Of a stretch of DNA of 64,000 bases, positions 35,608 to 63,159 are shown in pieces. The stretch comes from Macrostomum lignano (Eukaryota), in assembly GCA_002269645.1 (NCBI GenBank), contig NIVC01000362.1, forward strand, positions 588,883 through 652,882, given 5' to 3'. The notes beneath the pieces were generated by a model. It was given only the letters and a program-made list of their open reading frames with translations. It ran no database searches and was not told the origin of the DNA. The position numbers and the translations under genes are program-made. Numbering within the stretch: position 1 is the stretch's first letter; each line of letters opens with the position of its first letter.

Positions 35608-35939
35608 TCCTGTCGAGAATGTCTATAAGGAAGCTCAGTCTCTGCCCCATAGGCGTCTCACTAAAATAGAGTCAATAAATCAATCAAGTTTTATTTTACT
35701 AATAGTTCTATTTCATAAACTGCTAACAGTTTTCTTACTAGCTAATAAATTGAACTTAAAGAACGACTCGATCAGCTTAAAGCGCAAAAAATCGATAGAG
35801 TCAAAATGCAGGCCGAACACTCAAAGAGAAGCCGTACACTATGACATAAAAAGCGAACAAAAGTACATTTATCCCACAGTTATTACATGAACAAGCAAAA
35901 ACTTTAACAATGGAACAAACTGTGAATTGTGAAAGGAAC

Positions 35940-36645
35940 CACAAAATAGCCATCATGACGTGGTAGATCTACTCATCAAAGCACGATGAAAATGGCCATC
36001 ATGAGGTGGTAGATCTACTCATCAAAGCACGATGAAAATGGCCATCATGAGGTGGTAGATCTACTTATCAAAGCACAATACAAAATGGCCATCATGAGGT
36101 GGTAGATCTACTCATCAAAGCACAATACAAAATGGCCATCATGAGGTGGTAGATCTACTTATCAAAGCACAATACAAAATGGCCATCATGAGGTGGTAGA
36201 TCGACTCATCAAAGCACAATACAAAATGGCCATCATGAGGTGGTAGATCTACTTATCAAAGCACAATACAAAATGGCCATCATGAGGTGGTAGATCTACT
36301 CATCAAAGCACAATACAAAATGGCCATCATGAGGTGGTAGATCGACTCATCAAAGCACAATACAAAATGGCCATCATGAGGTGGTAGATCTACTCATCAA
36401 AGCACAATACAAAATGGCCATCATGAGGTGGTAGATCTACTTATCAAAGCACAATACAAAATGGCCATCATGAGGTGGTAGATCGACTCATCAAAGCACA
36501 ATACAAAATGGCCATCATGAGGTGGTAGATCGACTCATCAAAGCACAATACAAAATGGCCATCATGAGTTGGTAGATCTACTCATCAAAGCACAATACAA
36601 AATAGCCATCATGAGGTGGTAGATCTACTCATCAAAGCACGATGA
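35940..36645. repeat. 47-bp satellite array (CAAAATGGCCATCATGAGGTGGTAGATCTACTCATCAAAGCACAATA), about 15 copies
   Basis: Direct tandem copies, period 47. Confidence 0.95.
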
Positions 36646-39600
36646 AAATGGAGCCAAAAGCCGGCCGACAACTCAAACAGAGAACGCCGACAGTGACATA
36701 AAATGCTCAAACTTGATGCTAACTTCCGAGAGGCCACACACACATATAAGAGTTGCCACCAACTCTGATATAAAGAGAACAAAAAGTACTTTTAACCCAC
36801 AATAATTATACTTGCAATATTAACAGAACTGAACTGCAACAAAAAGGGAGGAACCTTTGCTGCTGCGCCTCCCATCCCATCTGCAAAGCAGCCTAGCACA
36901 GGATGAGAAGCACAGAATGGTCATCATAAAGTCGTGAGCAGGCTGATCAAAGCACAATAAATCAATAAAGTCAATTTGGTGGCAGAGTGCTGAATGGCGT
37001 CAGAGACATCAATTGCAGCAACAGCCCGTGTTACTGCCGTGAGCACACTATGTGAGAAAGCTGTCGCATCAAAGCACAGTGATAGATCCCACTTGGATAT
37101 CCCACAAATTCTCACCGAAAACAGTGAGACAAAGAAAGAATTTTGTTCAACAGCAATGACTGAGGTGGATAAGATGCAAAACTAAAACATATTACACACG
37201 GTTTCAGATTGGAGTTTGAATGAGAGTTGAAGAACTCAGGCAGCTTCACCGTACTCCAACACCGCAGTGAAGGCAGCAGAGAAAGGACACTTGCAAGTAG
37301 TAGCCAGGCTGTGCAACTGTGCAACAGGTGTTAGCGAGGCGGCACACATCAAAGACATGCCGCCGACTCTGACATGAAAAACTTTACAAAGTACGCTTAA
37401 AGAGAAACTGTACACTCTGACATAAAAAAGTGAACAAAAGTACATTTATCCCACAGTGATTAATGAAAAATCAAAACAGTTTAAATGGATCAAATTGTGA
37501 CGAGAATCACAAAATGGCCATCATGAGGTGGTAGATCTACTCATCAAAGCACAATAAAAATGGAGTCAAAATGCCGGCCATAGCCTCAAAGAAAGGCCGC
37601 CGACAGGGACATCAAAAGCTCAAACTTGATGCTACTTCTGTTAATCAGAATGGGTTGAGAAGCCGAACGTCTCAAAGCACAGTAAGTTTGGTCTGACAAA
37701 AATGAAAAAGCATGACCAGTTCGGTAAAATCATGTTTACAATCAGAGGTTTTTCCTAAAGATTTTTATAATTGTCTTTGGATGACATTTTCGTAGCTTAT
37801 TCTGAATGTTGTTATACGTTTCATTTTACAGTTTGCTACTTACATGTATGACCTCAGTAGTGAGTAGCGAGTTCAGTACCTTGACCTAAAATGGTTGAAT
37901 AGTGAAACTTTAACAAAGTGGCAGTTTTATACCACTAAAAACCAGTTCCGTTCACAAGAGGTCTTCGCTGTTTAAAAGTCCTGAGCTCGATTCCGCTCAC
38001 AGCCAGCCGCTGAGCTGTGGCTTCAATCACAGCGCTGAGACGGCTGTGACTCACTCATAAAAGCAAAATTTGGTGATTTAAATGAATACTTTTTCAATCA
38101 GTAAATTTACTAATTTAACCGGCAATCTGCGTTTTAATGGCATTAAAAGGCTGAGCATCCTAAGAACAGCTCATCAATATTAAGAGTTAAGCACAGGACT
38201 GGGGTCTCGCACAGGCACAATGGCACTGTGAACAGTGTCTGTATCTGATAACAGCTTAAATTTAAGTCAAACTTGGACTCTACGATATTTTGGTATACCA
38301 AAGGTATATAAGTGAATAGCCAAACTTAAAATCTACCTTAAAACTACATTGCAGACAGAGAGAAGCATGAGGGCAAATAAGTATGGAAAATAAGAAGCTT
38401 ATTTTAATATCATTATTGTTATTTTGTCATATTTACTGTTGCTTATTTATTTACTTCAAGAATCCTATACACAAGCAGTATTTAGCGCAATGAAAGCTAC
38501 ACAACACTGCTAAAGGTGTCAGCAAGACGGCACACATCAAAGATGCCACAGATTCTTCCATAACAAGTGAAGTACTTTTACCCCACACTTAAAACTACAA
38601 AATCATTTCAAAAAACATTTCACTTCAAAGAACGAAAATGAAAAAATGGTGACAAAAATCACAAAATGGCCATCATGTGGTAGATCTACTCATCAAAGCA
38701 CGATAAAAATGGAGCCAAAAGCCGGCCGACAACTCAAACAGAGAACGCCGACAGTGACATAAAATGCTCAGACTTGATGCTAACTTCCGAGAGGCCACAC
38801 ACATAAAAGAGTTGCCACCAACTCTGATATAAAGAGAACAAAAAGTACTTTTAACCCACAATAATTATACTTGCAATATTAACAGAACTGAACTGCAACA
38901 AAAAGGCAGGAACCTTTGCTGCTGCGCCTTCCATCCCATCTGCAAAGCAGCCTAGCACAGGATGAGAAGCACAGAATGGTCATCATAAAGTCGTGAGCAG
39001 GCTGATCAAAGCACAATAAATCAATAAAGTCAATTTGGTGGCAGAGTGCTGAATGGCGTCAGAGACATCAATTGCAGCAACAGCCCGTGTTACTGCCGTG
39101 AGCACACTATGTGAGAAAGTTGTCGCATCAAAGCACAGTGATAGATCTCACTTGGATATCCCACAAATTCTCACCGAAAACAGTGAGACAAAGAAAGAAT
39201 TTCGTTCAACAGCAATGACTGAGGTGGATAAGATGCAAAAGCAAAATATATTACACACGGTTTCAGATTGGAGTTTGAATGAGAGTTGAAGAACTCAGGC
39301 AGCTTCACCGTACTCCAACACCGCAGTGAAGGCAGCACAGAAAGGGCACTTGCAAGTTGTAGCCAGGCTGTGCAACTGTGCAACAGGTGTCAGCGAGACG
39401 GCACACATCAAAGATGCCGTTGACAGACAAAAAAGTAAAAGTACATTTATCCCACAGTATTCATAACAAATTTAATTACAACAGAAACTTTTCGCTTGAA
39501 AATACTAAAAGGGCAAACTGTGACAAGAATCACAAAATGGCCATCATGAGGTGGTAGATCGACTCATCAAAGCACGATGAAAATGGAGTCAAAATGCCGG

Positions 39601-40529
39601 CCAACACCTCAGAGAGGCCGCCGACAGGGACATCAAGAGCTCAAATGCGATGCTACTTCTGCTAACAGAATGAGTTGAGAAGCTGTCGCTTCCCAGCATA
39701 TAGTGGATCATGTTCACCATGAGAACCGCATAAATTATTATCTAGTGAAGTCACAGAATGCAACAGGTGCGCAACAGAAAACCGCACTGCAGGTGAAAAT
39801 ATTAAATCCCACACAATGGTCATTACATCCATTTCTTATCTAATTGTAGCTGTTAAAAAGAAGTGAAGCAGTTTACACGTTTCAAAACTAAAAAGTTCAA
39901 AAAACAAAAAAAAACAGGAACTCGGCACCTTTTAGCTGCTGCCATACCGCAGTGAAGGCAGCAGAGAAAGGACACTTGCAAGTTGTAGCCAGACTGTACA
40001 ACTGTGCAACAGGTGTCAGCGAAGCGGCACACATCAAAGAGATGCCGCCGACTTTCAACATAAAGTGTGAAAAATACTTTTATCCCACACTACTCATGAT
40101 TTATGACTGGAAAAGTGCTTATATCGAAGCGAAAAACAACGGCCTCCTTTCATTTTGACTGGGGCTATCCAGGCAGACCAGCTCTAGACTAAAGGACAAA
40201 TAACAAAGCTGAGGTTTGAAGGCCAAGCCAGCAGCCTGCGAACGCGTGACACAGAAGACTCGCAGTAACTGCTTTGGAGGGGGAGGATGCTTTGTGGTTG
40301 GCTATAAAATACACTGCCTTGAAAACTTTCCGGTACAGCGAATTCTGAGACGCGAGCCTTACACTAATAATAGGGTCTTTGGAGGCCAGCGCGTTTTAAA
40401 TTCTTTGTATCTTGTAAGCAGAAGATAACAGGAAAAAACCTGTTCTTTACAATATAAGTTAGAATGACAGTTTTCCCAAAAATATTGGGATTAGGCCAAG
40501 TTGTCAAGAATTACAAAATATCCTCATCA

Positions 40530-41265
40530 TAAAGCGGTGAAGCTACTCATCAAAGCACAATACAAAATGGCCATCATGAGGTGGTAGATCTACTCATCAA
40601 AGCACAATACAAAATGGCCATCATGAGGTGGTAGATCTACTCATCAAAGCACAATACAAAATGGCCATCATGAGGTGGTAGATCTACTCATCAAAGCACA
40701 ATACAAAATGGCCATCATGAGGTGGTAGATCTACTCATCAAAGCACAATACAAAATGGCCATTATGAGGTGGTAGATCTACTCATCAAAGCATAATACAA
40801 AATGGCCATCATGAGGTGGTAGATCGACTCATCAAAGCACAATACAAAATGGCCATCATGAGGTGGTAGATCTACTCATCAAAGCACAATACAAAATGGC
40901 CATCATGAGGTGGTAGATCTACTCATCAAAGCACAATACAAAATGGCCATCATGAGGTGGTAGATCTACTCATCAAAGCACAATACAAAATGGCCATCAT
41001 GAGGTGGTAGATCTACTCATCAAAGCACAATACAAAATGGCCATCATGAGGTGGTAGATCGACTCATCAAAGCACAATACAAAATGGCCATCATGAGGTG
41101 GTAGATCGACTCATCAAAGCACAATACAAAATGGCCATCATGAGGTGGTAGATCTACTCATCAAAGCACAATACAAAATGGCCATCATGAGGTGGTAGAT
41201 CGACTCATCAAAGCACAATACAAAATGGCCATCATGAGGTGGTAGATCGACTCATCAAAGCACGA
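40530..41265. repeat. 47-bp satellite array, about 16 copies
   Basis: Same monomer. Confidence 0.95.
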
Positions 41266-42077
41266 TGAAAATGGAGCCAAAAGCCGGCCGACAACTCAAA
41301 CAGAGAACGCCGACAGTGACATAAAGAGCTCAAACTTGATGCTAACTTCCGAGAGCCCACACATATAAAAGAGGTGCCACCAACTCTGATATAAAGAGAA
41401 CAAAAAGTACTTTTAACCCACAATAATTATACTTGCAATATTAACAGAACTTAACGGCAACAAAAAGGCAGGAACCTTTGCTGCTGCGCCTCCTATCCCA
41501 TCTGCAAAGCAGCCTAGCACAGGATGAGAAGCACAGAATGGTCATCATAAAGTCGTGAGCAGGCTGATTAAAGCACAATAAACCAATAAAGTCAATTTGG
41601 TGGCAGAGTGTTGAATGGCATCAGAGACATCAATTGCAGCAACAGCCCGTGTTACTGCCGTGAGCACACCACGTGAGAAAGTTGTCGCATCAAAGCACAG
41701 TGACAGATCCCACTTGGATGTCCCACGAATTCTCACTGAGAACAGTGAGACAAACAAATAATTTTGTTCAACAGCCATGATTGAGTTGGATAAGATGCAA
41801 AACTAAAACATTACACACGGTTTCAAATTTGAGTTTGAATGAGAGCTGACGAACTCAGCAGCTTCTCCATGCCCCGACACCGCAGTGAAGGCAGCACAGA
41901 ATGGGCACTTGCAAGTTGTAGCCAGGCTGTGCAACTGTGCAACAGGTGTCAGCGAGACGGCACACATCAAAGAGAAGCTGTACACTCTGACGTAAAAAGT
42001 GAACAAAAGTACATTTATCCCACAGTGATTAATGAAAAATCAAAACAGATTTAAATGGATCAAATTGTGACGAGAAT

Positions 42078-42455
42078 CACAAAATGGCCATCATGAGGTG
42101 GTAGATCTACTCATCAAAGCACAATACAAAATGGCCATCATGAGGTGGTAGATCTACTCATCAAAGCACAATACAAAATGGCCATCATGAGGTGGTAGAT
42201 CTACTTATCAAAGCACAATACAAAATGGCCATCATGAGGTGGTAGATCGACTCATCAAAGCACAATACAAAATGGCCATCATGAGGTGGTAGATCTACTC
42301 ATCAAAGCACAATACAAAATGGCCATCATGAGGTGGTAGATCTACTCATCAAAGCACGATACAAAATGGTCATCATGAGGTGGTAGATCGACTCATCAAA
42401 GCACAATACAAAATGGCCATCATGAGGTGGTAGATCTACTTATCAAAGCACGATA
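42078..42455. repeat. 47-bp satellite array, about 8 copies
   Basis: Same monomer. Confidence 0.93.
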
Positions 42456-44159
42456 AAAAATGGAGTCAAAATGCCGGCCATAACCTCAGAGAGGCCGCCG
42501 ACAGGGACATCAAAAGCTCAAACTTGATGCTACTCTGTAAATCAGAATGGGTTGAGAAGCCAAAACGTCTCAACGCAAAGTAAGTTTGGTCTGACAAAAA
42601 CGATAAAGCATGACCAGTTCGGTAAAATATGTTTACAATCAGAGGCTGTTCCTAAAATATATTTATAATTGTTGCTAAACTAAACTTTCCAACTGATAAT
42701 TGTATCGCTTAGAAGTTGGCTAAAATTGTTTGAACTGAATACTTTTAAACCAATAAAAGAATTTCCGTTCACACGAGGTCTTCGCTGCTCAAAGGTCCTG
42801 AGCTCGATCCCGCTTACAGTGAGCCGTAGAGCTGTGGCTTCAATCACAGCGCAGAGACACCGTGCATCATGAAAGCATGATTTGGAGATTCAAATGAAAA
42901 CTTTGTCAATCAGGAAAATTTACTAATTTATCTGGCCGTCTGCATTTCAGTAGCTTTAGAGGGCTGAGCATTCTGAGGGGAGCTCATCCAGATTGAGAGT
43001 TAGTCACAGGACTGGCACACAGGCACACTGGTACAGTGAAGTGTATGGATCTGATAGCATATCTTAAATTTAAGTACAACAATAAAGTCTGCAATACGAG
43101 TATTTGATATTCCTAGGGTACTAAAGTGAGAAACTAAACCTAAATCTACCTTTAAAACTACATTGCAGACAAAGAAGCGTTAAGGCGAAAAGTACAAGTA
43201 AAGCAAATAGGAAGCTTATTTTAATATTATTGTTATTTTGTCATACAAATAGTCGTTTATTAAATTTATCTAGTTCAAAAGTCCTAACAAGCATTCAGCA
43301 CCATAGAAGCTACAAAACTGTGCAACAGGTGTTGGAGAGACGGTACACATCAAAGAGGTACCGCCCACTCTGGCATAACAAGTTAACAAAGTACTTTTAT
43401 CCCACGCTATTTACGAGTTATTAAATATTAAATACAATACTAATCAGAACAACTTTTAACATCAAAAATTGAAATGAAACAAATTGTGACAAGAAATTCT
43501 CAGTGAATATTACAGATACTCACGCGTAAAAAATCACAACCAAGAATGTCGTTTAGAAAAATATTACACAGCTTCAGATTTGAGTTTGAATAAGAGCTGA
43601 CGAACTCAAGCAGCTTCTGCGTGCTCCCACACACCGCAGTGAAGGCAGCACAGAAAGGACACTTGCAAGTTGTAGCCAGGCTGTGCAACTGTGCAGCAGG
43701 TAACAGCAAGGCGGCACACATCAAAGACACCGCCGACTCTGACATGAAAAACTTAACAAAGTACGCTCAAAGAGAAACTGTACACTGTGACAAAAAAGTG
43801 AACAAAAGTACATTCATCCCACAGTGATTAATGAAAAAGCAACAGTTTTAAATGGATCAAATTGTGACAAGATTCACAAAATGGCCATCATGAGTTGGTA
43901 GATCTACTCAATAATGAACGATAAAAATGGAGCCAAAAGCCGGCCGACAACTCAAACAGAGAACGCCGACAGTGACATAAAATGCTCAAACTTGATGCTA
44001 ACTTCCGAGAGCCCACACGCACATATAAGAGTTGCCACAAACTCTGATATAAAGAGAACAAAAAAGTACTTCTATTCCACACTAATTATAAGTACAATAC
44101 TAATAAGAATAAGAACTTTTCTCCTCAGAAAACAGAAATGGCACAAATTGTGACAAGAA

Positions 44160-44910
44160 TCACAAAATGGCCATCATGAGGTGGTAGATCTACTCATCAA
44201 AGCACAATACAAAATGGCCATCATGAGGTGGTAGATCTACTTATCAAAGCACAATACAAAATGGCCATCATGAGGTGGTAGATCTACTCATCAAAGCACA
44301 ATACAAAATGGCCATCATGAGGTGGTAGATCTACTCATCAAAGCACAATACAAAATGGCCATCATGAGGTGGTAGATCTACTCATCAAAGCACAATACAA
44401 AATGGCCATCATGAGGTGGTAGATCTACTCATCAAAGCACAATACAAAATGGCCATCATGAGGTGGTAGATCTACTCATCAAAGCACAATACAAAATGGC
44501 CATCATGAGGTGGTAGATCTACTTATCAAAGCACAATACAAAATGGCCATCATGAGGTGGTAGATCTACTCATCAAAGCACAATACAAAATGGCCATCAT
44601 GAGGTGGTAGATCTACTCATCAAAGCACAATACAAAATCGCCATCATGAGGTGGTAGATCGACTCATCAAAACACAATACAAAATGGCCATCATGAGGTG
44701 GTAGATCGACTCATCAAAGCACAATACAAAATAGCCATCATGAGGTGGTAGATCGACTCATCAAAGCACAATACAAAATAGCCATCATGAGGTGGTAGAT
44801 CGACTCATCAAAGCACAATACAAAATGGCCATCATGAGGTGGTAGATCTACTCATCAAAGCACAATACAAAATGGCCATCATGAGGTGGTAGATCGACTC
44901 ATCAAATCAC
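44160..44910. repeat. 47-bp satellite array, about 16 copies
   Basis: Same monomer. Confidence 0.95.
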
Positions 44911-45714
44911 GATGAAAATGGAGCCAAAAGCCGGCCGACAACTCAAACAGAGAACGCCGACAGTGACATAAAATGCTCAAACTTGATGCTAACTTCCGAG
45001 AGCCCACACATATAAAAGAGGTGCCACCAACTTTGATATAAAGAGAACAAAAAGTACTTTTAACCCACAATAATTATACTTGCAATATCAACAGAACTTA
45101 ACGGCAACAAAAAGGGAGAAACCTTTGCTGCTGCGCCTCCCATCCCATCTGCAAAGCAGCCTAGCACAGGATGAGAAGCACAGAATGGTCATCATAAAGT
45201 CGTGAGCAGGCTGATCAAAGCACAATAAATCAATAAAGTCAATTTGGTGGCTGGTGGCAGGGTGCTGAATGGCGTCAGAGACATCAATTGCAGCAACAGC
45301 CCGTGTTACTGCCGTGAGCACACCACGTGAGAAAGTTGTCGCATCAAAGCACAGTGACAGATCCCACTTGGATGTCCCACGAATTGAAATAATTTTGTTC
45401 AACAGCCATGATTGAGTTGGATAAGATGCAAAACTAAAACATATTACACACGGTTTCAAATTTGAGTTTGAATGAGAGCTGACGAACTCAAGCAGCTTCT
45501 CCATGCCCCGACACCGCAGTGAAGGCAGCACAGAATGGGCACTTGCAAGTAGTAGCCAGGCTGTGCAACTGTGAAACAGGTGTCAGCGAGACGGCACACA
45601 TCAAAGAGAAGCTGTACACTCTGACGTAAAAAGTGAACAAAAGTACATTTATCCCACAGTGATTAATGAAAAATCAAAACAGATTTAAATGGATCAAATT
45701 GTGACGAGAATCAC

Positions 45715-48372: not shown

Positions 48373-48565
48373 ACAAAATGGCCATCATGAGGTGGTAGAT
48401 CGACTCATCAAAGCACAATACAAAATGGCCATCATGAGGTGGTAGATCGACTCATCAAAGCACAATACAAAATGGCCATCATGAGGTGGTAGATCTACTC
48501 ATCAAAGCACAATACAAAATGGCCATCATGAGGTGGTAGATCGACTCATCAAAGCACAATACAAA
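48373..48565. repeat. 47-bp satellite array, about 4 copies
   Basis: Same monomer. Confidence 0.9.
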
Positions 48566-50705: not shown

Positions 50706-53693
50706 AAAAATGGAGTCAAAATGCCGGCCATAACCTCAGAGAGGCCGCCGACAGGGACATCAAAAGCTCAAACTTGATGCTACTCTGTAAATCAGAATGG
50801 GTTGAGAAGCCAAAACGTCTCAACGCAAAGTAAGTTTGGTCTGACAAAAACGATAAAGCATGACCAGTTCGGTAAAATATGTTTACAATCAGAGGCTTTT
50901 CCTAAAATATATTTATAATTGTTGCTAAACTAAACTTTCCAACTGATAATTGTATCGCTTAGAAGTTGGCTAAAATTGTTTGAACTGAATACTTTTAAAC
51001 CAATAAAAGAATTTCCGTTCACACGAGGTCTTCGCTGCTCAAAGGTCCTGAGCTCGATCCCGCTTACAGTGAGCCGTAGAGCTGTGGCTTCAATCACAGC
51101 GCAGAGACACCGTGCATCATGAAAGCATGATTTGGAGATTCAAATGAAAACTTTGTCAATCAGGAAAATTTACTAATTTATCTGGCCGTCTGCATTTCAG
51201 TAGCTTTAGAGGGCTGAGCATTCTGAGGGGAGCTCATCCAGATTGAGAGTTAGTCACAGGACTGGCACACAGGCACACTGGTACAGTGAAGTGTATGGAT
51301 CTGATAGCATATCTTAAATTTAAGTACAACAATAAAGTCTGCAATACGAGTATTTGATATTCCTAGGGTACTAAAGTGAGAAACTAAACCTAAATCTACC
51401 TTTAAAACTACATTGCAGACAAAGAAGCGTTAAGGCGAAAAGTACAAGTAAAGCAAATAGGAAGCTTATTTTAATATTATTGTTATTTTGTCATACAAAT
51501 AGTCGTTTATTAAATTTATCTAGTTCAAAAGTCCTAACAAGCATTCAGCACCATAGAAGCTACAAAACTGTGCAACAGGTGTTGGAGAGACGGTACACAT
51601 CAAAGAGGTACCGCCCACTCTGACATAACAAGTTAACAAAGTACTTTTATCCCACGCTATTTACGAGTTATTAAATATTAAATACAATACTAATCAGAAC
51701 AACTTTTAACATCAAAAATTGAAATGAAACAAATTGTGACAAGAAATTCTCAGTGAATATTACAGATACTCACGCGTAAAAAATCACAACCAAGAATGTC
51801 GTTTAGAAAAATATTACACAGCTTCAGATTTGAGTTTGAATGAGAGCTGTCGAACTCAAGCAGCTTCTGCGTGCTCCCACACACCGCAGTGAAGGCAGCA
51901 CAGAAAGGACACTTGCAAGTTGTAGCCAGGCTGTACAACTGTGCAGCAGGTAACAGCAAGGCGGCACACATCAAAGACACCGCCGACTCTGACATGAAAA
52001 ACTTAACAAAGTACGCTCAAAAAGAAACTGTACACTGTGACAAAAAAGTGAACAAAAGTACATTCATCCCACAGTGATTAATGAAAAATCAACAGTTTTA
52101 AATGGATCAAATTGTGACAAGATTCACAAAATGGCCATCATGAGTTGGTAGCTCTACTCAATAATGAACGATAAAAATGGAGCCAAAAGCCGGCCGACAA
52201 CTCAAACAGAGAACGCCGACAGTGACATAAAATGCTCAAACTTGATGCTAACTTCCGAGAGCCCACACGCACATATAAGAGTTGCCACCAACTCTGATAT
52301 AAAGACAACAAAAAAGTACTTTTATTCCACACTATTTATAAGTACAATACTAATAAGAATAAGAACTTTTCTCCTCAGAAAACAGAAATGGCACAAATTG
52401 TGACAAGAATCACAAAATGGCCATCATGAGGTGGTAGATCTACTCATCAAAGCACAATAAAAATCGAGTCAAAATGCCGGCCATAACCTCAAAGAGGCCG
52501 CCGACAGGGACATCAAGAGCCCAAAATTGATGCTACTTCTGCTAACAGAATAAGTTGAGAAGCTGCCGCTTCCCAGCATACAGTGGATCATGTCCACCAT
52601 AAGATCCCCACAGCACATTATCAAATGCTAGAGATAGCAAAACCATAAGAACCACACGGATGCATAACAAATCGTACTCCGCAAAATTATAATAAAACTC
52701 CAAAACATCTTTAAACTTCTTATAAAATGGCGCTGACAAAAGTACGACAAGAGTATTACAACTGACACAAAGTACACGGGTGTTTCAAGACGCTAAAAGT
52801 GCAAAAACGTCACATGAACTCTGCTGCTTCTCCATGCCCCGACACCGCAGTGAAGGCAGCACAGAAAGGGCACTTGCAAGTAGTGGCCAGGCTATGCAAC
52901 TGTGAAACAGGTGTCAGAGCCGGCACACATCAAAGACATGCCGCCGACTCTGACATAAAAAGTGAGCAAAGTACTTTTATCCCACACAATAAATAAATAC
53001 AATACTAATTAGAACAAGAACTTTTAATTTCAGAAACTGAAATTATAAATTGTGACAAGAAATTCTCAGTGAGTACAGATACTCAGGCGTAGAAAAAATT
53101 CACGACAAAAATGTAGCTAAAAAACACGGTAAACTCAATCAGAACTGCATAGAATGCCATCATATTTGCGAATGGTGAGCGCTCATATTCGTTCTATGTA
53201 GCCTATAGGAATTTCCGTTCCCACTCGTATGCTCCTCAGTGTTTTAAATAAAACGAACAGACAGTGGAGGCGCTCGCTTCACTCTTTTCTCTCGCCCGCC
53301 TCTGCAGGCCCAAAGGCATGGCCACTGCCTCGGCTGGGCTGTAGAACCGTGAAATACTGCGCTTTGAATTCAATTCTTTGCTATCCGATGTAAGCAGAAG
53401 GTGCAGGCAGTACGCAAAATCCTACCTGTTACAGTATGATTTTGAATGAGAGCTGACAAACTCAAGCAGCTTCTCCATACTCCCACACCGCAGTGAAGGC
53501 AGCAGAGAAAGGACACTTGCAAGTTGTAGCCAGACTGTGCAACCGAAGCGGCACAAATCAAAGACATGCCGCCGACTATGACATTAAAATGTAAACAAAG
53601 TACTTTTATCCCACAGAATTTATAAATACAATACTAATTAAAACAGGAACTTTACTTTAGGAGCTAAAAATGGCACAAATTGTGACAAGAATC

Positions 53694-53933
53694 ACAAAAT
53701 GGCCATTATGAGGTGGTAGATCGACTCATCAAAGCACAATACAAAATAGCCATCATGAGGTGGTAGATCGACTCATCAAAGCACAATACAAAATGGCCAT
53801 CATGAGGTGGTAGATCGACTCATCAAAGCACAATACAAAATGGCCATCATGAGGTGGTAGATCTACTCATCAAAGCACAATACAAAATGGCCATCATGAG
53901 GTGGTAGATCGACTCATCAAAGCACAATACAAA
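53694..53933. repeat. 47-bp satellite array, about 5 copies
   Basis: Same monomer; duplicate of the 48373 array with one extra unit. Confidence 0.9.
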
Positions 53934-55602
53934 ATGGAGCCAAAAGCCGGCCGACAACTCAAACAGAGAACGCCGACAGTGACATAAAATGCTCAAACTT
54001 GATGCTAACTTCCGAGAGCCCACACATATAAAAGAGGTGCCACCAACTCTGATATAAAGAGAACAAAAAGTACTTTTAACCCACAATAATTATACTTGCA
54101 ATATTAACAGAACTTAACGGCAACAAAAAGGGAGGAACCTTTGCTGCTGCGCCTCCCATCCCATCTGCAAAGCAGCCTAGCACAGGATGAGAAGCACAGA
54201 ATGGTCAGCATAAAGTCGTGAGCAGGCTGATCAAAGCACAATAAATCAATAAAGTCAATTTGGTGGCAGAGTGCTGAATGGCGTCAGAGACATCAATTGC
54301 AGCAACAGCCCGTGTTACTGCCGTGAGCACACCACGTGAGAAAGTTGTCGCATCAAAGCACAGTGACAGATCCCACTTGGATGTCCCACGAATTCTCACT
54401 GAGAACAGTTAGACAAACAAATAATTTTGTTCAACAGCCATGATTGAGTTGGATAAGATGCAAAACTAAAACATTACACACGGTTTCAAATTTGAGTTTG
54501 AATGAGAGCTAACGAACTCAAGCAGCTTCTCCATGCCCCGACACCGCAGTGAAGGCAGCACAGAATGGGCACTTGCAAGTAGTAGCCAGGCTGTGCAACT
54601 GTGAAACAGGTGTCAGCGAGACGGCACACATCAAAGAGAAGCTGTACACTCTGACGTAAAAAGTGAACAAAAGTACATTTATCCCACAGTGATTAATGAA
54701 AAATCAAAACAGATTTAAATGGATCAAATTGTGACGAGAATCACAAAATGGCCATCATGAGGTGCTAGATCTACTCATCAAAGCACAATACAAAATGGAG
54801 CCAAAAGCCGGCCGACAACTCAAACAGAGAACGCCGACAGTGACATAAAATGCTCAAACTTGATGCTAACTTCCGAGAGCCCACACATATAAAAGAGGTG
54901 CCACCAACTCTGATATAAAGAGAACAAAAAGTACTTTTAACCCACAATAATTATACTTGCAATATTAACAGAACTTAACGGCAACAAAAAGGCAGGAACC
55001 TTTGCTGCTGCGCCTCCCATCCCATCTGCAAAGCAGCCTAGCACAGGATGAGAAGCACAGAATGGTCATCATAAAGTCGTGAGCAGGCTGATTAAAGCAC
55101 AATAAACCAATAAAGTCAATTTGGTGGCAGAGTGTTGAATGGCATCAGAGACATCAATTGCAGCAACAGCCCGTGTTACTGCCGTGAGCACACCACGTGA
55201 GAAAGTTGTCGCATCAAAGCACAGTGACAGATCCCACTTGGATGTCCCACGAATTCTCACTGAGAACAGTGAGACAAACAAATAATTTTGTTCAACAGCC
55301 ATGATTGAGTTGGATAAGATGCAAAACTAAAACATTACACACGGTTTCAAATTTGAGTTTGAATGAGAGCTGACGAACTCAGCAGCTTCTCCATGCCCCG
55401 ACACCGCAGTGAAGGCAGCACAGAATGGGCACTTGCAAGTTGTAGCCAGGCTGTGCAACTGTGCAACAGGTGTCAGCGAGACGGCACACATCAAAGAGAA
55501 GCTGTACACTCTGACGTAAAAAGTGAACAAAAGTACATTTATCCCACAGTGATTAATGAAAAATCAAAACAGATTTAAATGGATCAAATTGTGACGAGAA
55601 TC

Positions 55603-56073
55603 ACAAAATGGCCATCATGAGGTGCTAGATCTACTCATCAAAGCACAATACAAAATGGCCATCATGAGGTGGTAGATCTACTCATCAAAGCACGATACAA
55701 AATGGTCATCATGAGGTGGTAGATCTACTCATCAAAGCACAATACAAAATGGCCATCATGAGGTGGTAGATCTACTCATCAAAGCACAATACAAAATGGC
55801 CATCATGAGGTGGTAGATCTACTTATCAAAGCACAATACAAAATGGCCATCATGAGGTGGTAGATCGACTCATCAAAGCACAATACAAAATGGCCATCAT
55901 GAGGTGGTAGATCTACTCATCAAAGCACAATACAAAATGGCCATCATGAGGTGGTAGATCTACTCATCAAAGCACGATACAAAATGGTCATCATGAGGTG
56001 GTAGATCGACTCATCAAAGCACAATACAAAATGGCCATCATGAGGTGGTAGATCTACTTATCAAAGCACGATA
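55603..56073. repeat. 47-bp satellite array, about 10 copies
   Basis: Duplicate of the 50235 array. Confidence 0.93.
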
Positions 56074-59059
56074 AAAAATGGAGTCAAAATGCCGGCCATA
56101 ACCTCAGAGAGGCCGCCGACAGGGACATCAAAAGCTCAAACTTGATGCTACTCTGTAAATCAGAATGGGTTGAGAAGCCAAAACGTCTCAACGCAAAGTA
56201 AGTTTGGTCTGACAAAAACGATAAAGCATGACCAGTTCGGTAAAATATGTTTACAATCAGAGGCTTTTCCTAAAATATATTTATAATTGTTGCTAAACTA
56301 AACTTTCCAACTGATAATTGTATCGCTTAGAAGTTGGCTAAAATTGTTTGAACTGAATACTTTTAAACCAATAAAAGAATTTCCGTTCACACGAGGTCTT
56401 CGCTGCTCAAAGGTCCTGAGCTCGATCCCGCTTACAGTGAGCCGTAGAGCTGTGGCTTCAATCACAGCGCAGAGACACCGTGCATCATGAAAGCATGATT
56501 TGGAGATTCAAATGAAAACTTTGTCAATCAGGAAAATTTACTAATTTATCTGGCCGTCTGCATTTCAGTAGCTTTAGAGGGCTGAGCATTCTGAGGGGAG
56601 CTCATCCAGATTGAGAGTTAGTCACAGGACTGGCACACAGGCACACTGGTACAGTGAAGTGTATGGATCTGATAGCATATCTTAAATTTAAGTACAACAA
56701 TAAAGTCTGCAATACGAGTATTTGATATTCCTAGGGTACTAAAGTGAGAAACTAAACCTAAATCTACCTTTAAAACTACATTGCAGACAAAGAAGCGTTA
56801 AGGCGAAAAGTACAAGTAAAGCAAATAGGAAGCTTATTTTAATATTATTGTTATTTTGTCATACAAATAGTCGTTTATTAAATTTATCTAGTTCAAAAGT
56901 CCTAACAAGCATTCAGCACCATAGAAGCTACAAAACTGTGCAACAGGTGTTGGAGAGACGGTACACATCAAAGAGGTACCGCCCACTCTGACATAACAAG
57001 TTAACAAAGTACTTTTATCCCACGCTATTTACGAGTTATTAAATATTAAATACAATACTAATCAGAACAACTTTTAACATCAAAAATTGAAATGAAACAA
57101 ATTGTGACAAGAAATTCTCAGTGAATATTACAGATACTCACGCGTAAAAAATCACAACCAAGAATGTCGTTTAGAAAAATATTACACAGCTTCAGATTTG
57201 AGTTTGAATGAGAGCTGTCGAACTCAAGCAGCTTCTGCGTGCTCCCACACACCGCAGTGAAGGCAGCACAGAAAGGACACTTGCAAGTTGTAGCCAGGCT
57301 GTACAACTGTGCAGCAGGTAACAGCAAGGCGGCACACATCAAAGACACCGCCGACTCTGACATGAAAAACTTAACAAAGTACGCTCAAAAAGAAACTGTA
57401 CACTGTGACAAAAAAGTGAACAAAAGTACATTCATCCCACAGTGATTAATGAAAAATCAACAGTTTTAAATGGATCAAATTGTGACAAGATTCACAAAAT
57501 GGCCATCATGAGTTGGTAGCTCTACTCAATAATGAACGATAAAAATGGAGCCAAAAGCCGGCCGACAACTCAAACAGAGAACGCCGACAGTGACATAAAA
57601 TGCTCAAACTTGATGCTAACTTCCGAGAGCCCACACGCACATATAAGAGTTGCCACCAACTCTGATATAAAGACAACAAAAAAGTACTTTTATTCCACAC
57701 TATTTATAAGTACAATACTAATAAGAATAAGAACTTTTCTCCTCAGAAAACAGAAATGGCACAAATTGTGACAAGAATCACAAAATGGCCATCATGAGGT
57801 GGTAGATCTACTCATCAAAGCACAATAAAAATCGAGTCAAAATGCCGGCCATAACCTCAAAGAGGCCGCCGACAGGGACATCAAGAGCCCAAAATTGATG
57901 CTACTTCTGCTAACAGAATAAGTTGAGAAGCTGCCGCTTCCCAGCATACAGTGGATCATGTCCACCATAAGATCCCCACAGCACATTATCAAATGCTAGA
58001 GATAGCAAAACCATAAGAACCACACGGATGCATAACAAATCGTACTCCGCAAAATTATAATAAAACTCCAAAACATCTTTAAACTTCTTATAAAATGGCG
58101 CTGACAAAAGTACGACAAGAGTATTACAACTGACACAAAGTACACGGGTGTTTCAAGACGCTAAAAGTGCAAAAACGTCACATGAACTCTGCTGCTTCTC
58201 CATGCCCCGACACCGCAGTGAAGGCAGCACAGAAAGGGCACTTGCAAGTAGTGGCCAGGCTATGCAACTGTGAAACAGGTGTCAGAGCCGGCACACATCA
58301 AAGACATGCCGCCGACTCTGACATAAAAAGTGAGCAAAGTACTTTTATCCCACACAATAAATAAATACAATACTAATTAGAACAAGAACTTTTAATTTCA
58401 GAAACTGAAATTATAAATTGTGACAAGAAATTCTCAGTGAGTACAGATACTCAGGCGTAGAAAAAATTCACGACAAAAATGTAGCTAAAAAACACGGTAA
58501 ACTCAATCAGAACTGCATAGAATGCCATCATATTTGCGAATGGTGAGCGCTCATATTCGTTCTATGTAGCCTATAGGAATTTCCGTTCCCACTCGTATGC
58601 TCCTCAGTGTTTTAAATAAAACGAACAGACAGTGGAGGCGCTCGCTTCACTCTTTTCTCTCGCCCGCCTCTGCAGGCCCAAAGGCATGGCCACTGCCTCG
58701 GCTGGGCTGTAGAACCGTGAAATACTGCGCTTTGAATTCAATTCTTTGCTATCCGATGTAAGCAGAAGGTGCAGGCAGTACGCAAAATCCTACCTGTTAC
58801 AGTATGATTTTGAATGAGAGCTGACAAACTCAAGCAGCTTCTCCATACTCCACACCGCAGTGAAGGCAGCAGAGAAAGGACACTTGCAAGTTGTAGCCAG
58901 ACTGTGCAACCGAAGCGGCACAAATCAAAGACATGCCGCCGACTATGACATTAAAATGTAAACAAAGTACTTTTATCCCACAGAATTTATAAATACAATA
59001 CTAATTAAAACAGGAACTTTACTTTAGGAGCTAAAAATGGCAAAAATTGTGAAAAGAAT

Positions 59060-60423
59060 CACAAAATGGCCATTATGAGGTGGTAGATCGACTCATCAAA
59101 GCACAATACAAAATGGCCATCATGAGGTGGTAGATCGACTCATCAAAGCACAATACAAAATGGCCATCATGAGGTGGTAGATCTACTCATCAAAGCACAA
59201 TACAAAATGGCCATCATGAGGTGGTAGATCTACTTATCAAAGCACAATACAAAATGGCCATCATGAGGTGGTAGATCTACTCATCAAAGCACAATACAAA
59301 ATGGCCATCATGAGGTGGTAGATCGACTCATCAAAGCACAATACAAAATGGCCATCATGAGGTGGTAGATCGACTCATCAAAGCACAATACAAAATGGCC
59401 ATCATGAGGTGGTAGATCGACTCATCAAAGCACAATACAAAATGGCCATCATGAGGTGGTAGATCGACTCATCAAAGCACAATACAAAATGGCCATCATG
59501 AGGTGGTAGATCTACTTATCAAAGCACAATACAAAATGGCCATCATGAGGTGGTAGATCGACTCATCAAAGCACAATACAAAATGGCCATCATGAGGTGG
59601 TAGATTTACTCATCAAAGCACAATACAAAATGGCCATCATGAGGTGGTAGATCGACTCATCAAAGCACAATACAAAATGGCCATCATGAGGTGGTAGATC
59701 TACTCATCAAAGCACAATACAAAATGGCCATCATGAGGTGGTAGATCGACTCATCAAAGCACAATACAAAATGGCCATCATGAGGTGGTAGATCTACTCA
59801 TCAAAGCACAATACAAAATGGCCATCATGAGGTGGTAGATCGACTCATCAAAGCACAATACAAAATGGCCATCATGAGGTGGTAGATCGACTCATCAAAG
59901 CACAATACAAAATGGCCATCATGAGGTGGTAGATCTACTTATCAAAGCACAATACAAAATGGCCATCATGAGGTGGTAGATCGACTCATCAAAGCACAAT
60001 ACAAAATGGCCATCATGAGGTGGTAGATCGACTCATCAAAGCACAATACAAAATGGCCATCATGAGGTGGTAGATCGACTCATCAAAGCACAATACAAAA
60101 TGGCCATCATGAGGTGGTAGATCGACTCATCAAAGCACAATACAAAATGGCCATCATGAGGTGGTAGATCTACTTATCAAAGCACAATACAAAATGGCCA
60201 TCATGAGGTGGTAGATCGACTCATCAAAGCACAATACAAAATGGCCATCATGAGGTGGTAGATCTACTCATCAAAGCACAATACAAAATGGCCATCATGA
60301 GGTGGTAGATCGACTCATCAAAGCACAATACAAAATGGCCATCATGAGGTGGTAGATCTACTTATCAAAGCACAATACAAAATGGCCATCATGAGGTGGT
60401 AGATCTACTTATCAAAGCACAAT
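59060..60423. repeat. 47-bp satellite array, about 29 copies (longest)
   Basis: Same monomer. Confidence 0.95.
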
Positions 60424-63159
60424 AAAAATGGAGCCAAAATGCCGGCCATAGCCTCAGAGAGGCCACCGACAGGGACATCAAAAGCTTAAACTTGATGCTA
60501 CTCTGTAAATCAGAATGGGTTGAGAAGCCAAAACGTCTCAACGCAAAGTAAGTTTGGTCTGACAAAAACGATAAAGCATGACCAGTTCGGTAAAATATGT
60601 TTACAATCAGAGGCTGTTCCTAAAGTATATTTATAATTGTTGCTAAACTAAACTTTCCAACTGATAATTGTATTACTTAGAAGTTGGCTAAAATTGTTTG
60701 AACTGAATACTACTCATTAGGTCAGTAGTGAGAAGCGAGTTGAGCACATTGAGCTAAAATGGTTAGGTGATCAAACTTTAAAAAATTGAGTTTTAAACCA
60801 CTAAAAAGAATTATCCGACCACAGGTCTTTACTGCTCAAAGTTCCCAAGCTCGATCCCACCTTGATGAGATCCGGAGGCCCTTTGAGGTTTAGGTAGAGG
60901 CTGCAATTCGAGACCTGCTGAAGCACGCTTTAAACAGAGAAGCCGCCAAGGTGAAGCGCCGCCGTACGGTAGGACTTGAGGTGACTGCGCATCTGCAAAC
61001 AGATTTTCTACAGCACGCTTTTGCTTCGTTGAGCGACTGCTTTAAATTGTACTGTAGCTCACAGCTCACAGTAGACCGTGACTTCAAGCACAGCGCTGAG
61101 ACGGCCGCGACTCATAAAAGCATGATTTGGGTATTGAAATGAAAACTTTGTCAATCAGTAAAATTAAATAAATCACTGACAGATTGAATGAAAGAAAGCA
61201 ATTTAACTGGTCGTCTGAATTTCTGTGGCATTGGGGGGCTGATCATCCTAAAGCCTCGCACTGGCACTGTGAACAGTGTCTGAATCTGATCTACCTTAAA
61301 ACTGCATTGCTGCCCAGAAGCATGAGGGCAAATAAGTATGGCAAATAAAAAAGCATATTTAAATAACTTTGTTACTTTGAAAAATTAACTGATGTTTCTT
61401 TATTTAGTTCAAAAGTGCTGAATAAAAACAGCCTTTGGCTCCATTGAAGCTGCACAACTGTGCAACAGGTGTGAGAGAGACGGCACACATCAAAGAGATG
61501 CACTAATTCTGACAAAGAGAACAAGGTACACTTATCCCACACTTTAAAATTACAAAATTATTTTTAAACGTTTCAATTAAGAAATGGAATGGCACAAACT
61601 GCGACAAGAATTACAAAATGGCCAACATGAGGTGGTAGATCTACTCATCAAAGCACAATAAAAATCGAGCCAAAATGCCGGCCATAAGCTCAAAGAGAGG
61701 CCGCCGACAGGGACAGCAAGAGCTCAAAAGTTGCAGCTGACAGAAGAACAAGTGTTTTACTACTGACAGACATACGACGTGTTCTTTAAGACGCTAAAAG
61801 TGCAAAAATATCACATGAACTCAGCAGCTTCTCCATGCCCCGACACCGCAGTGAAGGCAGCACAGAAAGGGCACTTGCAAGTAGTGGCCAGGCTGTGCAA
61901 CTGTGCAACAGATGTCAGCGAGGCGACACACATCAAAGACATGCCGCCGACTCTGACATAAAAAGTGAGCAAAGTACTTTTATTCCACACTATTTATACA
62001 TACAATACTAATTAGAACAAGAACTTTTAATTTCAGAAACTGAAAAAAAGCCTAAATTGTTGCAAGAATTACAAAATGGCCATCATGAGGTGGTAGATCT
62101 ACTCATCAAAGCACGATAAAAATGTGCAACAGGTGCCAAAGCCGATACACAACTTAGATTGCCGTTGAGTCTGACACAAAGAACAAAGTAGTTTTATCCC
62201 ACACCATTTATATTTGATACACTGCAGCAGGACAACAAATCCAGAATAGAAGCCTATGAGAACAGACAAGATCATTGACACCTGCAGCCGGCGTCATCAC
62301 AACTGATGCAGCTGGAGATGCACAAACGCCTCTTATGGCTGCAAATTAGGAAGAAAAACGACGTGAACAAAACAGGCGGCAACGGGCGAGGCTCGCCACA
62401 ATGAGTCAGAAGTCCAGACTCAGCAACGGCAGGAATAGGACAATCAGAGGCAAATCAGATCAAAGAAATGCCGCTGACTAGCATAAAGAGAGAACGAAAT
62501 ACTTTTATCCCACATTATTTATTACAGTATTATTCTAAAAACTCTTCTCCTCAGAAAGCAGAAATGGCACAAACTGTGACAAGAATCACAAAATGGCCAT
62601 CATGAGGTGGTAGATCTACTCATCAAAGCACAATAAAAATCGAGTCAAAATGCCGGCCATAACCTCAGAGAGGTCTCCAACAGGGACATCAAGAGCTCAA
62701 ATGCGATGCTACTTCTGCTAACAGAATGAGTTGAGAAGCTGCCGCTTCCCAGCCTGCAGTGGATCATGTCCACCATGAGAATGCCACAGCACATTATCAA
62801 ATGTTGGACTACACAGATGCATAATGACAAAATCGTACTCCAAAAACTCATAATAAAAATTACAAAAAATGTTTGAATTTCTGATAAAATTGTAGCGCAA
62901 GAGTTTTATAGACTCAAAACACACGGGTGTTTCAAGACTCAAGCAGTTTCTTCATGCTCCCACACCGCAGTGCAGCATAGAAAGGACACTTGCAAGTTGT
63001 AGCCAGGCTGTGCAAATGTGCAACAGGTACCACAGAATCGGTACACATCAAAGAGATATCGACATAAAAATGAACAATAGTACTTTTATCCCACACTATT
63101 TATAACTATAATAGTAATTAGAGCATTTAAATGATTCCAAAGAAAAGCGTATTCGGTCG

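What the first reader, a model, noticed from the sequence alone, without database searches (positions are those of the whole stretch)
35845..63125. A roughly 70-nt intron-like unit repeated about 40 times in register with the ankyrin fragments (one repeat per exon)
Seen: the most conserved motif in the mosaic, GTAC(T/A)TTTATCCCAC, occurs about 40 times. It always follows an 'ADxDIK'-type fragment and precedes an AT-rich stretch. Several copies are complete canonical introns: 47641-47712 (GTGAGC...TACTAAT...TTTTAATTTCAG, 72 nt) and 48270-48339 (GTAAAC...TACTAAT...TTTACTTTAG, 70 nt); the unit ending at 44128 has CTTTTCTCCTCAG. The next bases read (x)NRNGT or (x)AKNGT, the loop that starts the next ankyrin repeat. 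Established: many ankyrin genes have an intron at an equivalent position in each repeat. Inference: the ancestor had one ankyrin repeat per exon, a layout that allows combinatorial exon use. Retention of the internal TTTATCCCAC box even where GT or AG has decayed hints at a separate role (splicing enhancer, recombination signal or small-RNA promoter element).
Basis: partly seen in the sequence, partly recalled or inferred. Interest (0 to 1): 0.7.

Follow-up and report, generated by a model that had tools for sequence, protein, structure and literature searches.

The report
Decayed ankyrin gene array with intron relics
In the flatworm Macrostomum lignano, a 27-kb stretch is the non-coding wreck of an ankyrin-repeat gene that recent duplications have copied many times, so one old intron start is now present 40 times; it is mostly ordinary, apart from a 15-base piece of that intron that has changed less than its surroundings.

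Summary
The box GTAC[A/T]TTTATCCCAC is real: 40 copies (up to 2 mismatches), all on the + strand, 35863-63094, against 0.17 expected by chance. But the 40 copies are only about 15 lineages. The region is built from very recent direct duplications (5.6 kb at 99.8%, 2.1 kb x3 at 99.3%), and their alignment ends fall mostly in ten arrays of a 47-nt minisatellite that itself derives from the neighbouring ankyrin-like exon.

The window is Macrostomum lignano. Ankyrin origin is supported, though weakly. An intron origin is plausible: the box lies at +10 to +24 after a GTGAGC donor that fits the species consensus. Only 7 of 40 copies (two lineages) keep donor, TACTAAT and acceptor together.

"One repeat per exon" holds at one 214-nt unit only; no box spacing is near 170 nt. 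No frame is open: 20 of 23 exon-B copies have stops in all three frames, and most share the same TGA. Amplification therefore probably happened in DNA that was already non-coding.

The box is an island of low change (about 3-4 times fewer changes than most flanks). It is not the most conserved block (the 47-mer is), not a breakpoint hot spot, does not fold and matches no Rfam family. A separate role is neither shown nor excluded. Interest is low to moderate.

The parts
35750..63160 (+). Whole mosaic: one-strand, A-rich, non-coding array of ankyrin-like exon remnants, intron relics and 47-nt minisatellite arrays
   Evidence: All repeats are direct and none inverted. AT skew is +0.15 to +0.41. 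The longest stop-free + strand stretch is 99 aa. No Rfam or tRNA hit.
35863..63094 (+). The 40 box copies (15 nt each). Starts: 35863, 36786, 37440, 38572, 38845, 39441, 40074, 41407, 42009, 43391, 43808, 44066, 45054, 45643, 47096, 47650, 48279, 48702, 49305, 49563, 50165, 51641, 52058, 52316, 52971, 53600, 54070, 54673, 54931, 55533, 57009, 57426, 57684, 58339, 58967, 61526, 61974, 62188, 62499, 63080
   Evidence: Found. They form about 15-17 lineages at 90% identity.
47641..47712 (+). Complete intron-like unit, 72 nt: GTGAGC, box at +10, TACTAAT, TTTCAG
   Evidence: The donor fits the M. lignano GT[G/A]AG consensus (PMC8629364). Removing the unit does not open a frame.
52962..53033 (+). Copy of the 72-nt unit
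   Evidence: Same lineage as 47641.
58330..58401 (+). Copy of the 72-nt unit
   Evidence: Lies in the 99.8% identical 5.6-kb duplicate.
61965..62036 (+). Copy of the 72-nt unit; its box reads GTACTTTTATTCCAC
48270..48339 (+). Complete intron-like unit, 70 nt: GTAAAC, box, TACTAAT, TTTAG
53591..53660 (+). Copy of the 70-nt unit
58958..59027 (+). Copy of the 70-nt unit
44066..44128 (+). Unit with box, TACTAAT and CTTTTCTCCTCAG but no upstream GT (donor zone reads GAGAAC); copies at 52316-52378 and 57684-57746
62499..62554 (+). Old single-copy unit: ATAC variant of the box and a CTCTTCTCCTCAG acceptor
61974..62188 (+). The shortest box-to-box unit (214 nt): one ankyrin-like repeat (KKPKLLQELQNGHHEVVDLLIKAR...) between two boxes
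   Evidence: It is the only place that fits 'one repeat per exon'.
52766..52993 (+). Stop-free 76-aa 'exon A' fragment (…DTAVKAAQKGHLQVVARLCNCETGVRAGTHQRHAADSDIK…) running into the box
   Evidence: phmmer gives 34 hits with E<=1e-3, best 2.8e-9; 7 of the 8 best are ankyrin proteins. It aligns in 33-aa register. Pfam itself is silent on it.
35941..36651 (+). 47-nt minisatellite array (unit ACAAAATGGCCATCATGAGGTGGTAGATCTACTCATCAAAGCACAAT, read as NGHHEVVDLLIKAQ)
   Evidence: Pfam Ank E=0.002, 18.9 bits, below the 21.1 cut-off.
40543..41274 (+). 47-nt array
42079..42463 (+). 47-nt array
44162..44921 (+). 47-nt array
45713..46002 (+). 47-nt array
48373..48569 (+). 47-nt array
50235..50713 (+). 47-nt array
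53694..53937 (+). 47-nt array
55603..56081 (+). 47-nt array
59061..60431 (+). 47-nt array, the longest (29 copies)
48369..59304 (+). Youngest tandem duplication: 48369-53937 and 53738-59304, 99.8% identical over 5.6 kb, both ends in 47-nt arrays

Best explanation
The region is the non-coding remnant of an ankyrin-repeat gene of Macrostomum lignano. It lies head to head with DHX16.

The box is the 5' part (positions +10 to +24) of a short GT-AG intron, about 60-72 nt long, that sat between two ankyrin-like exons. Part of the downstream exon (the helix read as NGHHEVVDLLIKAQ) expanded into a 47-nt minisatellite. Unequal crossing-over between these arrays then duplicated multi-kb blocks again and again. 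Each block carried the exon-intron-exon junction, so one or two ancestral junctions became 40.

*Shown:*
- the copy number, single orientation and nested duplication structure;
- alignment ends concentrated in the 47-mer arrays;
- ankyrin similarity;
- intron-type signals in a minority of copies;
- absence of any open frame.

*Inferred:*
- the intron origin;
- that amplification came after loss of coding capacity;
- that the lower rate of change in the box is a leftover of a splicing role next to a weak donor (for example a U-rich/C-rich intronic enhancer helping U1 binding), made more visible because the box is flanked by slippage-prone A/T-rich runs.

No present function of the box is shown.
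For: **Organism.** The zDHHC16 ORF is 316/316 identical to M. lignano A0A1I8F879 outside one 24-aa gap. Published figures for this genome are 15% simple and tandem repeats, about 5 introns per gene and introns of 1.1-1.4 kb on average (PMC5730564). The window's DHX16 and DERA introns, filled with minisatellites, agree with this.

**Duplication structure.**
- 5.6 kb at 99.8%, 2.1 kb x3 at 99.3%, and further blocks at 93-98%. All are direct.
- 38 of 59 alignment ends lie in or next to 47-mer arrays, which cover 21% of the region.

**Ankyrin origin.** See; weaker support.

**Intron signals.**
- GTGAGC fits the species donor consensus GT[G/A]AG, and the acceptor is CAG (PMC8629364).
- TACTAAT lies about 25-30 nt before the pyrimidine-AG.

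**Common descent.** Both flanks are homologous in nearly all copies.

**Non-coding state.**
- 20 of 23 exon-B copies have stops in all three frames.
- 21 share a stop just upstream of NGHHEVV in that frame. The 3'-most old copies 61597 and 62055 lack it.
- Removing either complete intron-like unit still runs into stops within 2-19 codons.

**Low change in the box.**
- 0.87 parsimony changes per site against about 3 in the flanks.
- pi 0.093 against 0.2-0.47 among 15 lineages.
- Column permutation P<5e-5; 5-column block permutation P=0.024.
Against: - If the lineages diverged after coding capacity was lost, as the shared TGA suggests, a past splicing constraint cannot explain why the box changed less during that divergence. 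Rate heterogeneity, chance or a present function would be needed.
- Only two lineages keep a full set of intron signals.
- Pfam ankyrin models stay below threshold (18.9 bits against 21.1) or silent.
- No close parent gene was found.
- Reading frames cannot be reconstructed consistently: 'ADSDIK' is out of frame with GHLQVV in most copies.
- Alignment ends inside tandem arrays are partly a BLAST ambiguity.
- No transcript data were available.
Confidence: 0.6

Rival explanations
1. The box is a cis-element that is still under selection in a non-coding array. It could be a protein-binding site in every unit of a higher-order repeat (as the CENP-B box is in alpha satellite), or a processing signal in a long non-coding transcript.
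For: - The box is kept with at most 2 mismatches at every junction found by box-independent probes.
- It shows 3-4 times fewer changes than most flanks, although the lineages seem to have diverged after frame-breaking lesions.
- The T variant contains a perfect 10-nt palindrome, AAAGTACTTT (read directly from the sequence).
Against: - Significance is only borderline when short-range autocorrelation is kept (P=0.024).
- In recent duplicates the box changes at 3/105 sites against 82/1206 in the flanks, which is not significant.
- Among lineages with exon B the box ranks third in a continuum of window diversities: 0.02, 0.02, 0.10, 0.11, 0.14, 0.19....
- Box variants do exist (T5A, T10A, C11T, G1A).
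- No binding or expression data are available.
Confidence: 0.15
2. The unit is not intron-derived. It is simply part of a composite satellite, and its resemblance to an intron and to ankyrin repeats is partly coincidental.
For: - Only 7 of 40 copies have GT, a branch-site motif and an acceptor together.
- Pfam ankyrin matches are below threshold or absent.
- A pseudo-protein query found no homologue.
- This genome is full of minisatellites of all periods (PMC5730564).
Against: - phmmer hits ankyrin proteins at E down to 2.8e-9, with several matched stretches and a 33-residue register.
- A second ankyrin helix (NGHHEVVDLLIKA) lies on the other side of the unit.
- The donor matches the species consensus, and the branch motif sits at the canonical distance from a CAG acceptor (PMC8629364).
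Confidence: 0.1
3. The copy number is inflated, or the order scrambled, by misassembly of a highly repetitive region.
For: - Blocks of 5.6 kb at 99.8% and 2.1 kb x3 at 99.3% are flanked by minisatellite arrays.
- The M. lignano assemblies are known to be hard to build and to carry redundancy (PMC5730564).
Against: - The duplicates differ at scattered positions and show graded identities (88-99.8%), as real nested duplications do.
- Older single-copy lineages exist.
Confidence: 0.1
4. The box is a recombination signal that drives the duplications.
For: A 52-nt internal tandem duplication ends exactly at AAAGTAC upstream of boxes 37440, 43808, 52058 and 57426.
Against: - Only 4 of 59 alignment ends lie within 30 nt of a box, where about 5 are expected from coverage.
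- 38 of 59 lie in the 47-mer arrays.
Confidence: 0.03
5. The unit encodes or promotes a small RNA: a mirtron-type hairpin, or an snRNA-type promoter element.
For: The unit has the length of a mirtron (about 70 nt).
Against: - Folding energies are -1.9 to -5.9 kcal/mol, with z-scores from +0.9 to -1.4.
- No Rfam family reaches its gathering score anywhere in the window, and there is no tRNA.
- The sequence downstream of the box is the least conserved part.
Confidence: 0.02

Closest known systems
Unprocessed (duplicated) pseudogene arrays and gene-derived tandem repeats
   Same: - Homology to a protein family and retained intron remnants.
- Stops and frameshifts in every frame.
- Tandem direct copies at graded identity.
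   Different: - No intact parent gene could be identified here.
- One exon segment has itself become a 47-nt minisatellite, and these arrays appear to drive further block duplication.
Ankyrin genes with one or two 33-residue repeats per exon (human ANK1 type; from my own knowledge, not tested here)
   Same: An intron-like unit lies near a boundary between ankyrin-like repeats. One 214-nt unit has a single repeat between two such units.
   Different: - Most box-to-box intervals are 258-2559 nt and hold several repeat-equivalents, arrays or unrelated sequence.
- The repeats do not keep a 33-residue period across junctions.
- The locus is non-coding.
Higher-order repeat satellites with a conserved short protein-binding box (CENP-B box in alpha satellite)
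   Same: A 15-20 nt block is kept in every unit of a multi-kb higher-order tandem structure whose other parts vary.
   Different: - No evidence of centromeric location or of a binding protein.
- Units are irregular, not a fixed monomer.
- The box is less conserved than the adjacent 47-mer.
Intronic splicing enhancers just downstream of weak donors (U-rich TIA-1/Nam8-type sites; from my own knowledge)
   Same: Position is +10 to +24 from the donor. A U-rich core (CUUUUAU) is followed by a C-rich CCCAC. The donors are mostly weak (GTGAAC, GTAAAC, GTTAAC).
   Different: - No splicing is demonstrated.
- The motif is longer and more specific than known U-rich enhancers.
- It is absent from the genuine DHX16 introns in the window.

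Membership tests
U2-type GT-AG spliceosomal intron (relic) | 5' GT in the species' donor context (GT[G/A]AG in M. lignano, PMC8629364) | tested here: inconclusive
   GTGAGC occurs in 4 copies. Another 19 have GT with a non-consensus +5 base, and 17 have no GT within 16 nt upstream of the box.
U2-type GT-AG spliceosomal intron (relic) | Branch-site motif and pyrimidine tract followed by AG at the 3' end | tested here: inconclusive
   TACTAAY in 13 of 40 copies, pyrimidine-AG in 14 of 40, and all three signals in 7 of 40.
U2-type GT-AG spliceosomal intron (relic) | Removal joins two exons into an open reading frame | tested here: not met
   After either complete unit, every frame meets a stop within 2-19 codons. 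20 of 23 exon-B copies have stops in all three frames.
U2-type GT-AG spliceosomal intron (relic) | Spliced junction reads | not testable with these tools
   No RNA-seq access.
U12-type intron | Donor /RTATCCTT and branch site TCCTTAAC near the 3' end | tested here: not met
   The box has TTATCCCAC, with T where R is required in all 40 copies. The branch motif present is TACTAAT.
Ankyrin repeat (Pfam PF00023 / PF12796) | Match to the Pfam models at or above the gathering score | tested here: not met
   Best Ank score is 18.9 bits against 21.1, E=0.002. Stop-free exon-A fragments give no hit.
Ankyrin repeat (Pfam PF00023 / PF12796) | Significant similarity to known ankyrin proteins, with a 33-residue period | tested here: met
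   34 hits with E<=1e-3, best 2.8e-9, with 4-15 matched stretches each. 7 of the 8 best are ankyrin proteins by Pfam. RHMN...TGVR lie 33 residues apart, aligned to ADVN...ADVN of P0245.
Mirtron / pre-miRNA hairpin | Stable hairpin spanning the short intron | tested here: not met
   Minimum free energy -1.9 to -5.9 kcal/mol; z from +0.9 to -1.4.
Transposable element (MITE, SINE, Helitron) | Terminal inverted repeats, a tRNA-like head, or copies in both orientations | tested here: not met
   No inverted matches in 35-64 kb. All boxes are on the + strand. No tRNA or Rfam hit.
Higher-order satellite with a protein-binding box | Tandem higher-order structure with a short block kept in each unit | tested here: met
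Higher-order satellite with a protein-binding box | Bound by a specific protein; chromosomal location such as a centromere | not testable with these tools
   No binding or cytogenetic data.
Unprocessed pseudogene | Family homology plus disabling lesions plus retained intron sequence | tested here: met
   The parent gene was not identified.

The most novel reading that the evidence does not exclude
The 15-20 nt block AAAGTAC[T/A]TTTATCCCACA is kept by present-day selection in every unit of a non-coding array derived from exons and an intron. It would be a sequence-specific binding site (DNA or RNA) that gives the array a function, analogous to the CENP-B box in alpha satellite, and it would have been recruited from the 5' end of a dead intron.
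Probability: 0.12. Interest if true: 0.6.

Novelty: new member of a known kind. Interest (0 to 1): 0.3.

Why it matters
- It is a clear example of how a repeat-rich genome turns a gene into satellite-like DNA. An exon segment becomes a minisatellite, and the arrays then act as substrates for unequal exchange that multiplies whole exon-intron blocks.
- For annotation of M. lignano, it warns that ankyrin-like, intron-like signals here are not a gene.
- The one open point is the island of low change inside a dead intron. If it proved to be under selection, it would show a functional motif being retained or recruited inside a decaying array.

Tried and rejected
- **U12-type intron:** rejected. The donor base is wrong in all copies and the branch motif is U2-type.
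- **Mirtron or structured RNA:** rejected.
- **Rfam families and tRNA/SINE heads:** nothing found.
- **Inverted repeats or TIRs:** none.
- **Recombination signal at the box:** rejected.
- **Search for a parent gene:**
  - a frame-mended pseudo-protein found no candidates;
  - the stop-free fragment found only generic ankyrin proteins at 36-51% identity over short stretches.
- **Synteny through DHX16 homologues:** L001 (34% GC, unrelated organism) and L002 (Paragonimus) carry no box.
- **Exact look-ups of four window ORFs and of the M. lignano zDHHC16 protein:** no contig found, so no second copy of the locus or paralogue introns could be read.
- **Collection scans:**
  - the 47-mer core has no match in metagenome contigs;
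  - the 19-nt box has 4 matches in prokaryote genomes, about what I estimate from the collection size.
- **Pfam on ten stop-free stretches of both strands, including the 164-aa minus-strand frame at 45091-45582:** nothing.
- **Homology of the 69-nt satellite to exon B:** not significant; 124 of 500 shuffles score as well.
- **Literature:** nothing on ankyrin pseudogene arrays or this box in Macrostomum.


Full report
**Observation.** The pattern GTACWTTTATCCCAC with up to two mismatches occurs 40 times. All copies are on the + strand, between 35863 and 63094, where shuffles give 0.17.

The box was found by searching for itself, so I looked for junctions with two probes that do not contain it.
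- A profile of the upstream 70 nt gives 44 hits, all in this region and on this strand. Forty are followed by the box 11-19 nt later, and four by a 52-nt internal tandem duplication and then the box.
- All 23 starts of the downstream 'exon B' have a box 52-81 nt upstream.

So no junction has lost the box.

**How many independent copies.** The 40 copies collapse to 31 distinct sequences and about 15-17 lineages at 90% identity.
- The region is a nest of direct duplications: 48369-53937 against 53738-59304 (99.8% over 5.6 kb), 42079-44215 in three copies (99.3%), and further blocks at 88-98%. There are no inverted matches.
- Ten arrays of a 47-nt minisatellite, about 120 units in all, lie between the blocks.
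- Of 59 distinct alignment ends, 38 lie in or next to these arrays, which cover 21% of the region. Only 4 lie within 30 nt of a box.
- The copy number is therefore explained by unequal exchange between 47-mer arrays, not by 40 introns of one gene.

**Organism and setting.** The zDHHC16-like ORF at 19481-20623 (-) is identical at all 316 aligned residues to Macrostomum lignano A0A1I8F879. The next best hit is 41% identical.
- The left 35 kb carries genes on the minus strand only: a CHP-like EF-hand protein, DERA, zDHHC16, an unknown ORF and DHX16. Their GT-AG introns are 0.5-3.5 kb long and filled with minisatellites.
- This fits the published picture of 15% simple and tandem repeats, about five introns per gene and introns averaging 1.1-1.4 kb (PMC5730564).
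- The mosaic starts about 0.8 kb upstream of the DHX16 start codon, on the other strand, and is A-rich throughout.

**Is it ankyrin?**
- Pfam is weak: Ank scores 18.9 bits against a cut-off of 21.1 for the NGHHEVVDLLIKA helix, and nothing for stop-free exon-A pieces.
- A search of 1.8 billion representatives with the stop-free 76-aa piece 52766-52993 gave 34 hits at E<=1e-3, the best at 2.8e-9. Each has 4-15 matched stretches, and seven of the eight best are ankyrin proteins by Pfam.
- The alignment to P0245 puts RHMN...TAVKAAQKGHLQVVARL...TGVR on ADVN...TALQAAAEKGHLAMVERLL...ADVN, that is, in 33-residue register.
- Ankyrin descent is therefore supported, but no close parent gene was found.
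- The 'ADSDIK' reading is in frame with that helix in only 6 of 40 copies. 'AKNGT' is in another frame than NGHHEVV.

**Is it an intron?**
- In M. lignano the donor consensus is GT[G/A]AG and the acceptor CAG (PMC8629364).
- The best-kept lineage has GTGAGC, the box at +10 to +24, TACTAAT about 25-30 nt before TTTCAG, and a length of 72 nt. A second lineage has GTAAAC...TACTAAT...TTTAG, 70 nt.
- These two lineages make up the 7 copies that have all three signals.
- Across the 40 copies, 23 have an upstream GT, 13 a TACTAAY and 14 a good acceptor.
- The simplest reading is that the ancestor of all copies was a short GT-AG intron whose 3' half has since decayed by substitutions and indels.

**Coding state.**
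- No frame is open. The longest + strand stop-free stretch in the mosaic is 99 aa.
- Removal of either complete unit leads to stops within 2-19 codons.
- 20 of 23 exon-B copies have stops in all three frames.
- 21 share a stop just upstream of NGHHEVV in that frame. The two old copies at 61597 and 62055 lack it.
- This suggests the amplified lineages diverged after coding capacity was lost.

**One repeat per exon?** Box spacing ranges from 214 to 2559 nt, with recurrent values of 258, 417, about 600, 629 and 655 nt, and never about 170. Only 61974->62188 (214 nt) holds one ankyrin-like repeat between two boxes. The interval 61526->61974 holds both helix types in one frame with three stops, which amounts to several repeat-equivalents. 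The inference is not supported as stated.

**Conservation of the box.**
- On a tree of the 40 copies the box has 0.87 parsimony changes per site, against about 3 in the exon-like flanks, 3.7 in the donor zone and 2.9 in the rest of the intron.
- Among 15 lineages its diversity is 0.093, against 0.20-0.47 for other non-overlapping 15-nt windows.
- Permuting columns gives P<5e-5; permuting 5-column blocks gives P=0.024.
- Three qualifications apply:
  - Among the lineages that carry exon B, the 47-mer-homologous segment is much more conserved (0.022-0.024) than the box (0.104). The windows form a continuum.
  - Within recent duplicates the box changes at 3/105 sites against 82/1206 in the flanks, which is not significant.
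  - The box is bracketed by A-runs and AT-rich sequence that are prone to slippage, which inflates apparent change around it.
- The box is a real but modest island, and its cause is unresolved.

**Other readings tested.**
- U12-type donor: no.
- Hairpin or mirtron: no.
- Known RNA family or tRNA: no.
- Mobile element: no inverted copies or terminal repeats.
- Recombination signal: no.

**What could not be done.**
- Scans of the metagenome and prokaryote collections were uninformative.
- Relatives' DHX16 loci carry no box.
- So introns of intact paralogues, orthologous arrays and RNA-seq junctions remain untested.

**Verdict.** The region is a decayed ankyrin-gene array in M. lignano, amplified through minisatellites, and the 40 boxes are copies of the 5' part of one or two dead introns. 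A separate role for the box is possible but unproven.

Noticed in passing
window 19844-19915 (-): The UniProt model of M. lignano zDHHC16 (A0A1I8F879) lacks 24 residues. These correspond to a 72-nt GT...CAG segment that is open and in frame in the window. It is either a retained-or-spliced 'exitron' or an annotation artefact.
   Followed up: partly
window 10500-34925 (-): Five genes lie on the minus strand only: CHP-like EF-hand, DERA, zDHHC16, the unknown ORF 25555-26088 and DHX16. Their introns consist almost entirely of minisatellites. This may be an SL trans-spliced cluster or operon, as described for this species (PMC8629364).
   Followed up: no
window 457-690, 8297-9235, 18700-19467; 1444-1910, 5161-6530; 26221-27123, 30057-30501; 24153-24274, 27696-28206: The same minisatellite families (units of 28, 35, 16 and 31 nt) recur at separate places, several of them inside different introns.
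   Followed up: no
window 63161-64000 (+): A 69-nt satellite (12+ copies, runs off the window) begins 66 nt after the last box, where the 47-mer array sits in other units. It is open in several frames. Similarity to exon B is not significant.
   Followed up: partly
box (T variant, e.g. 47647-47656) and 47-mer (e.g. 48393-48402): Two of the most conserved blocks, the box and the 47-mer, each contain a perfect 10-nt palindrome: AAAGTACTTT and GTAGATCTAC.
   Followed up: no
window 37375-37440, 43745-43808, 51995-52058, 57363-57426 (+): A tandem duplication of about 52 nt, covering the exon end and the donor zone, ends exactly at AAAGTAC. It leaves half a box followed by a full one.
   Followed up: partly
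e.g. window 47579-47594 (+): An 8-nt tandem duplication TGTGCAAC|TGTGCAAC in exon A is shared by nearly all lineages. Removing it would put GHLQVVARL in frame with AADSDIK.
   Followed up: partly
window 45091-45582 (-): The longest stop-free stretch inside the mosaic is on the opposite strand (164 aa). It has no Pfam match and is probably chance in T-rich antisense sequence.
   Followed up: partly
window 46000-47100 and 60500-61400 (+): A roughly 1-kb segment without ankyrin-like or box sequence is present in two copies at 97% identity. It contains an 82-aa open stretch with no family match. Its origin is unknown.
   Followed up: partly
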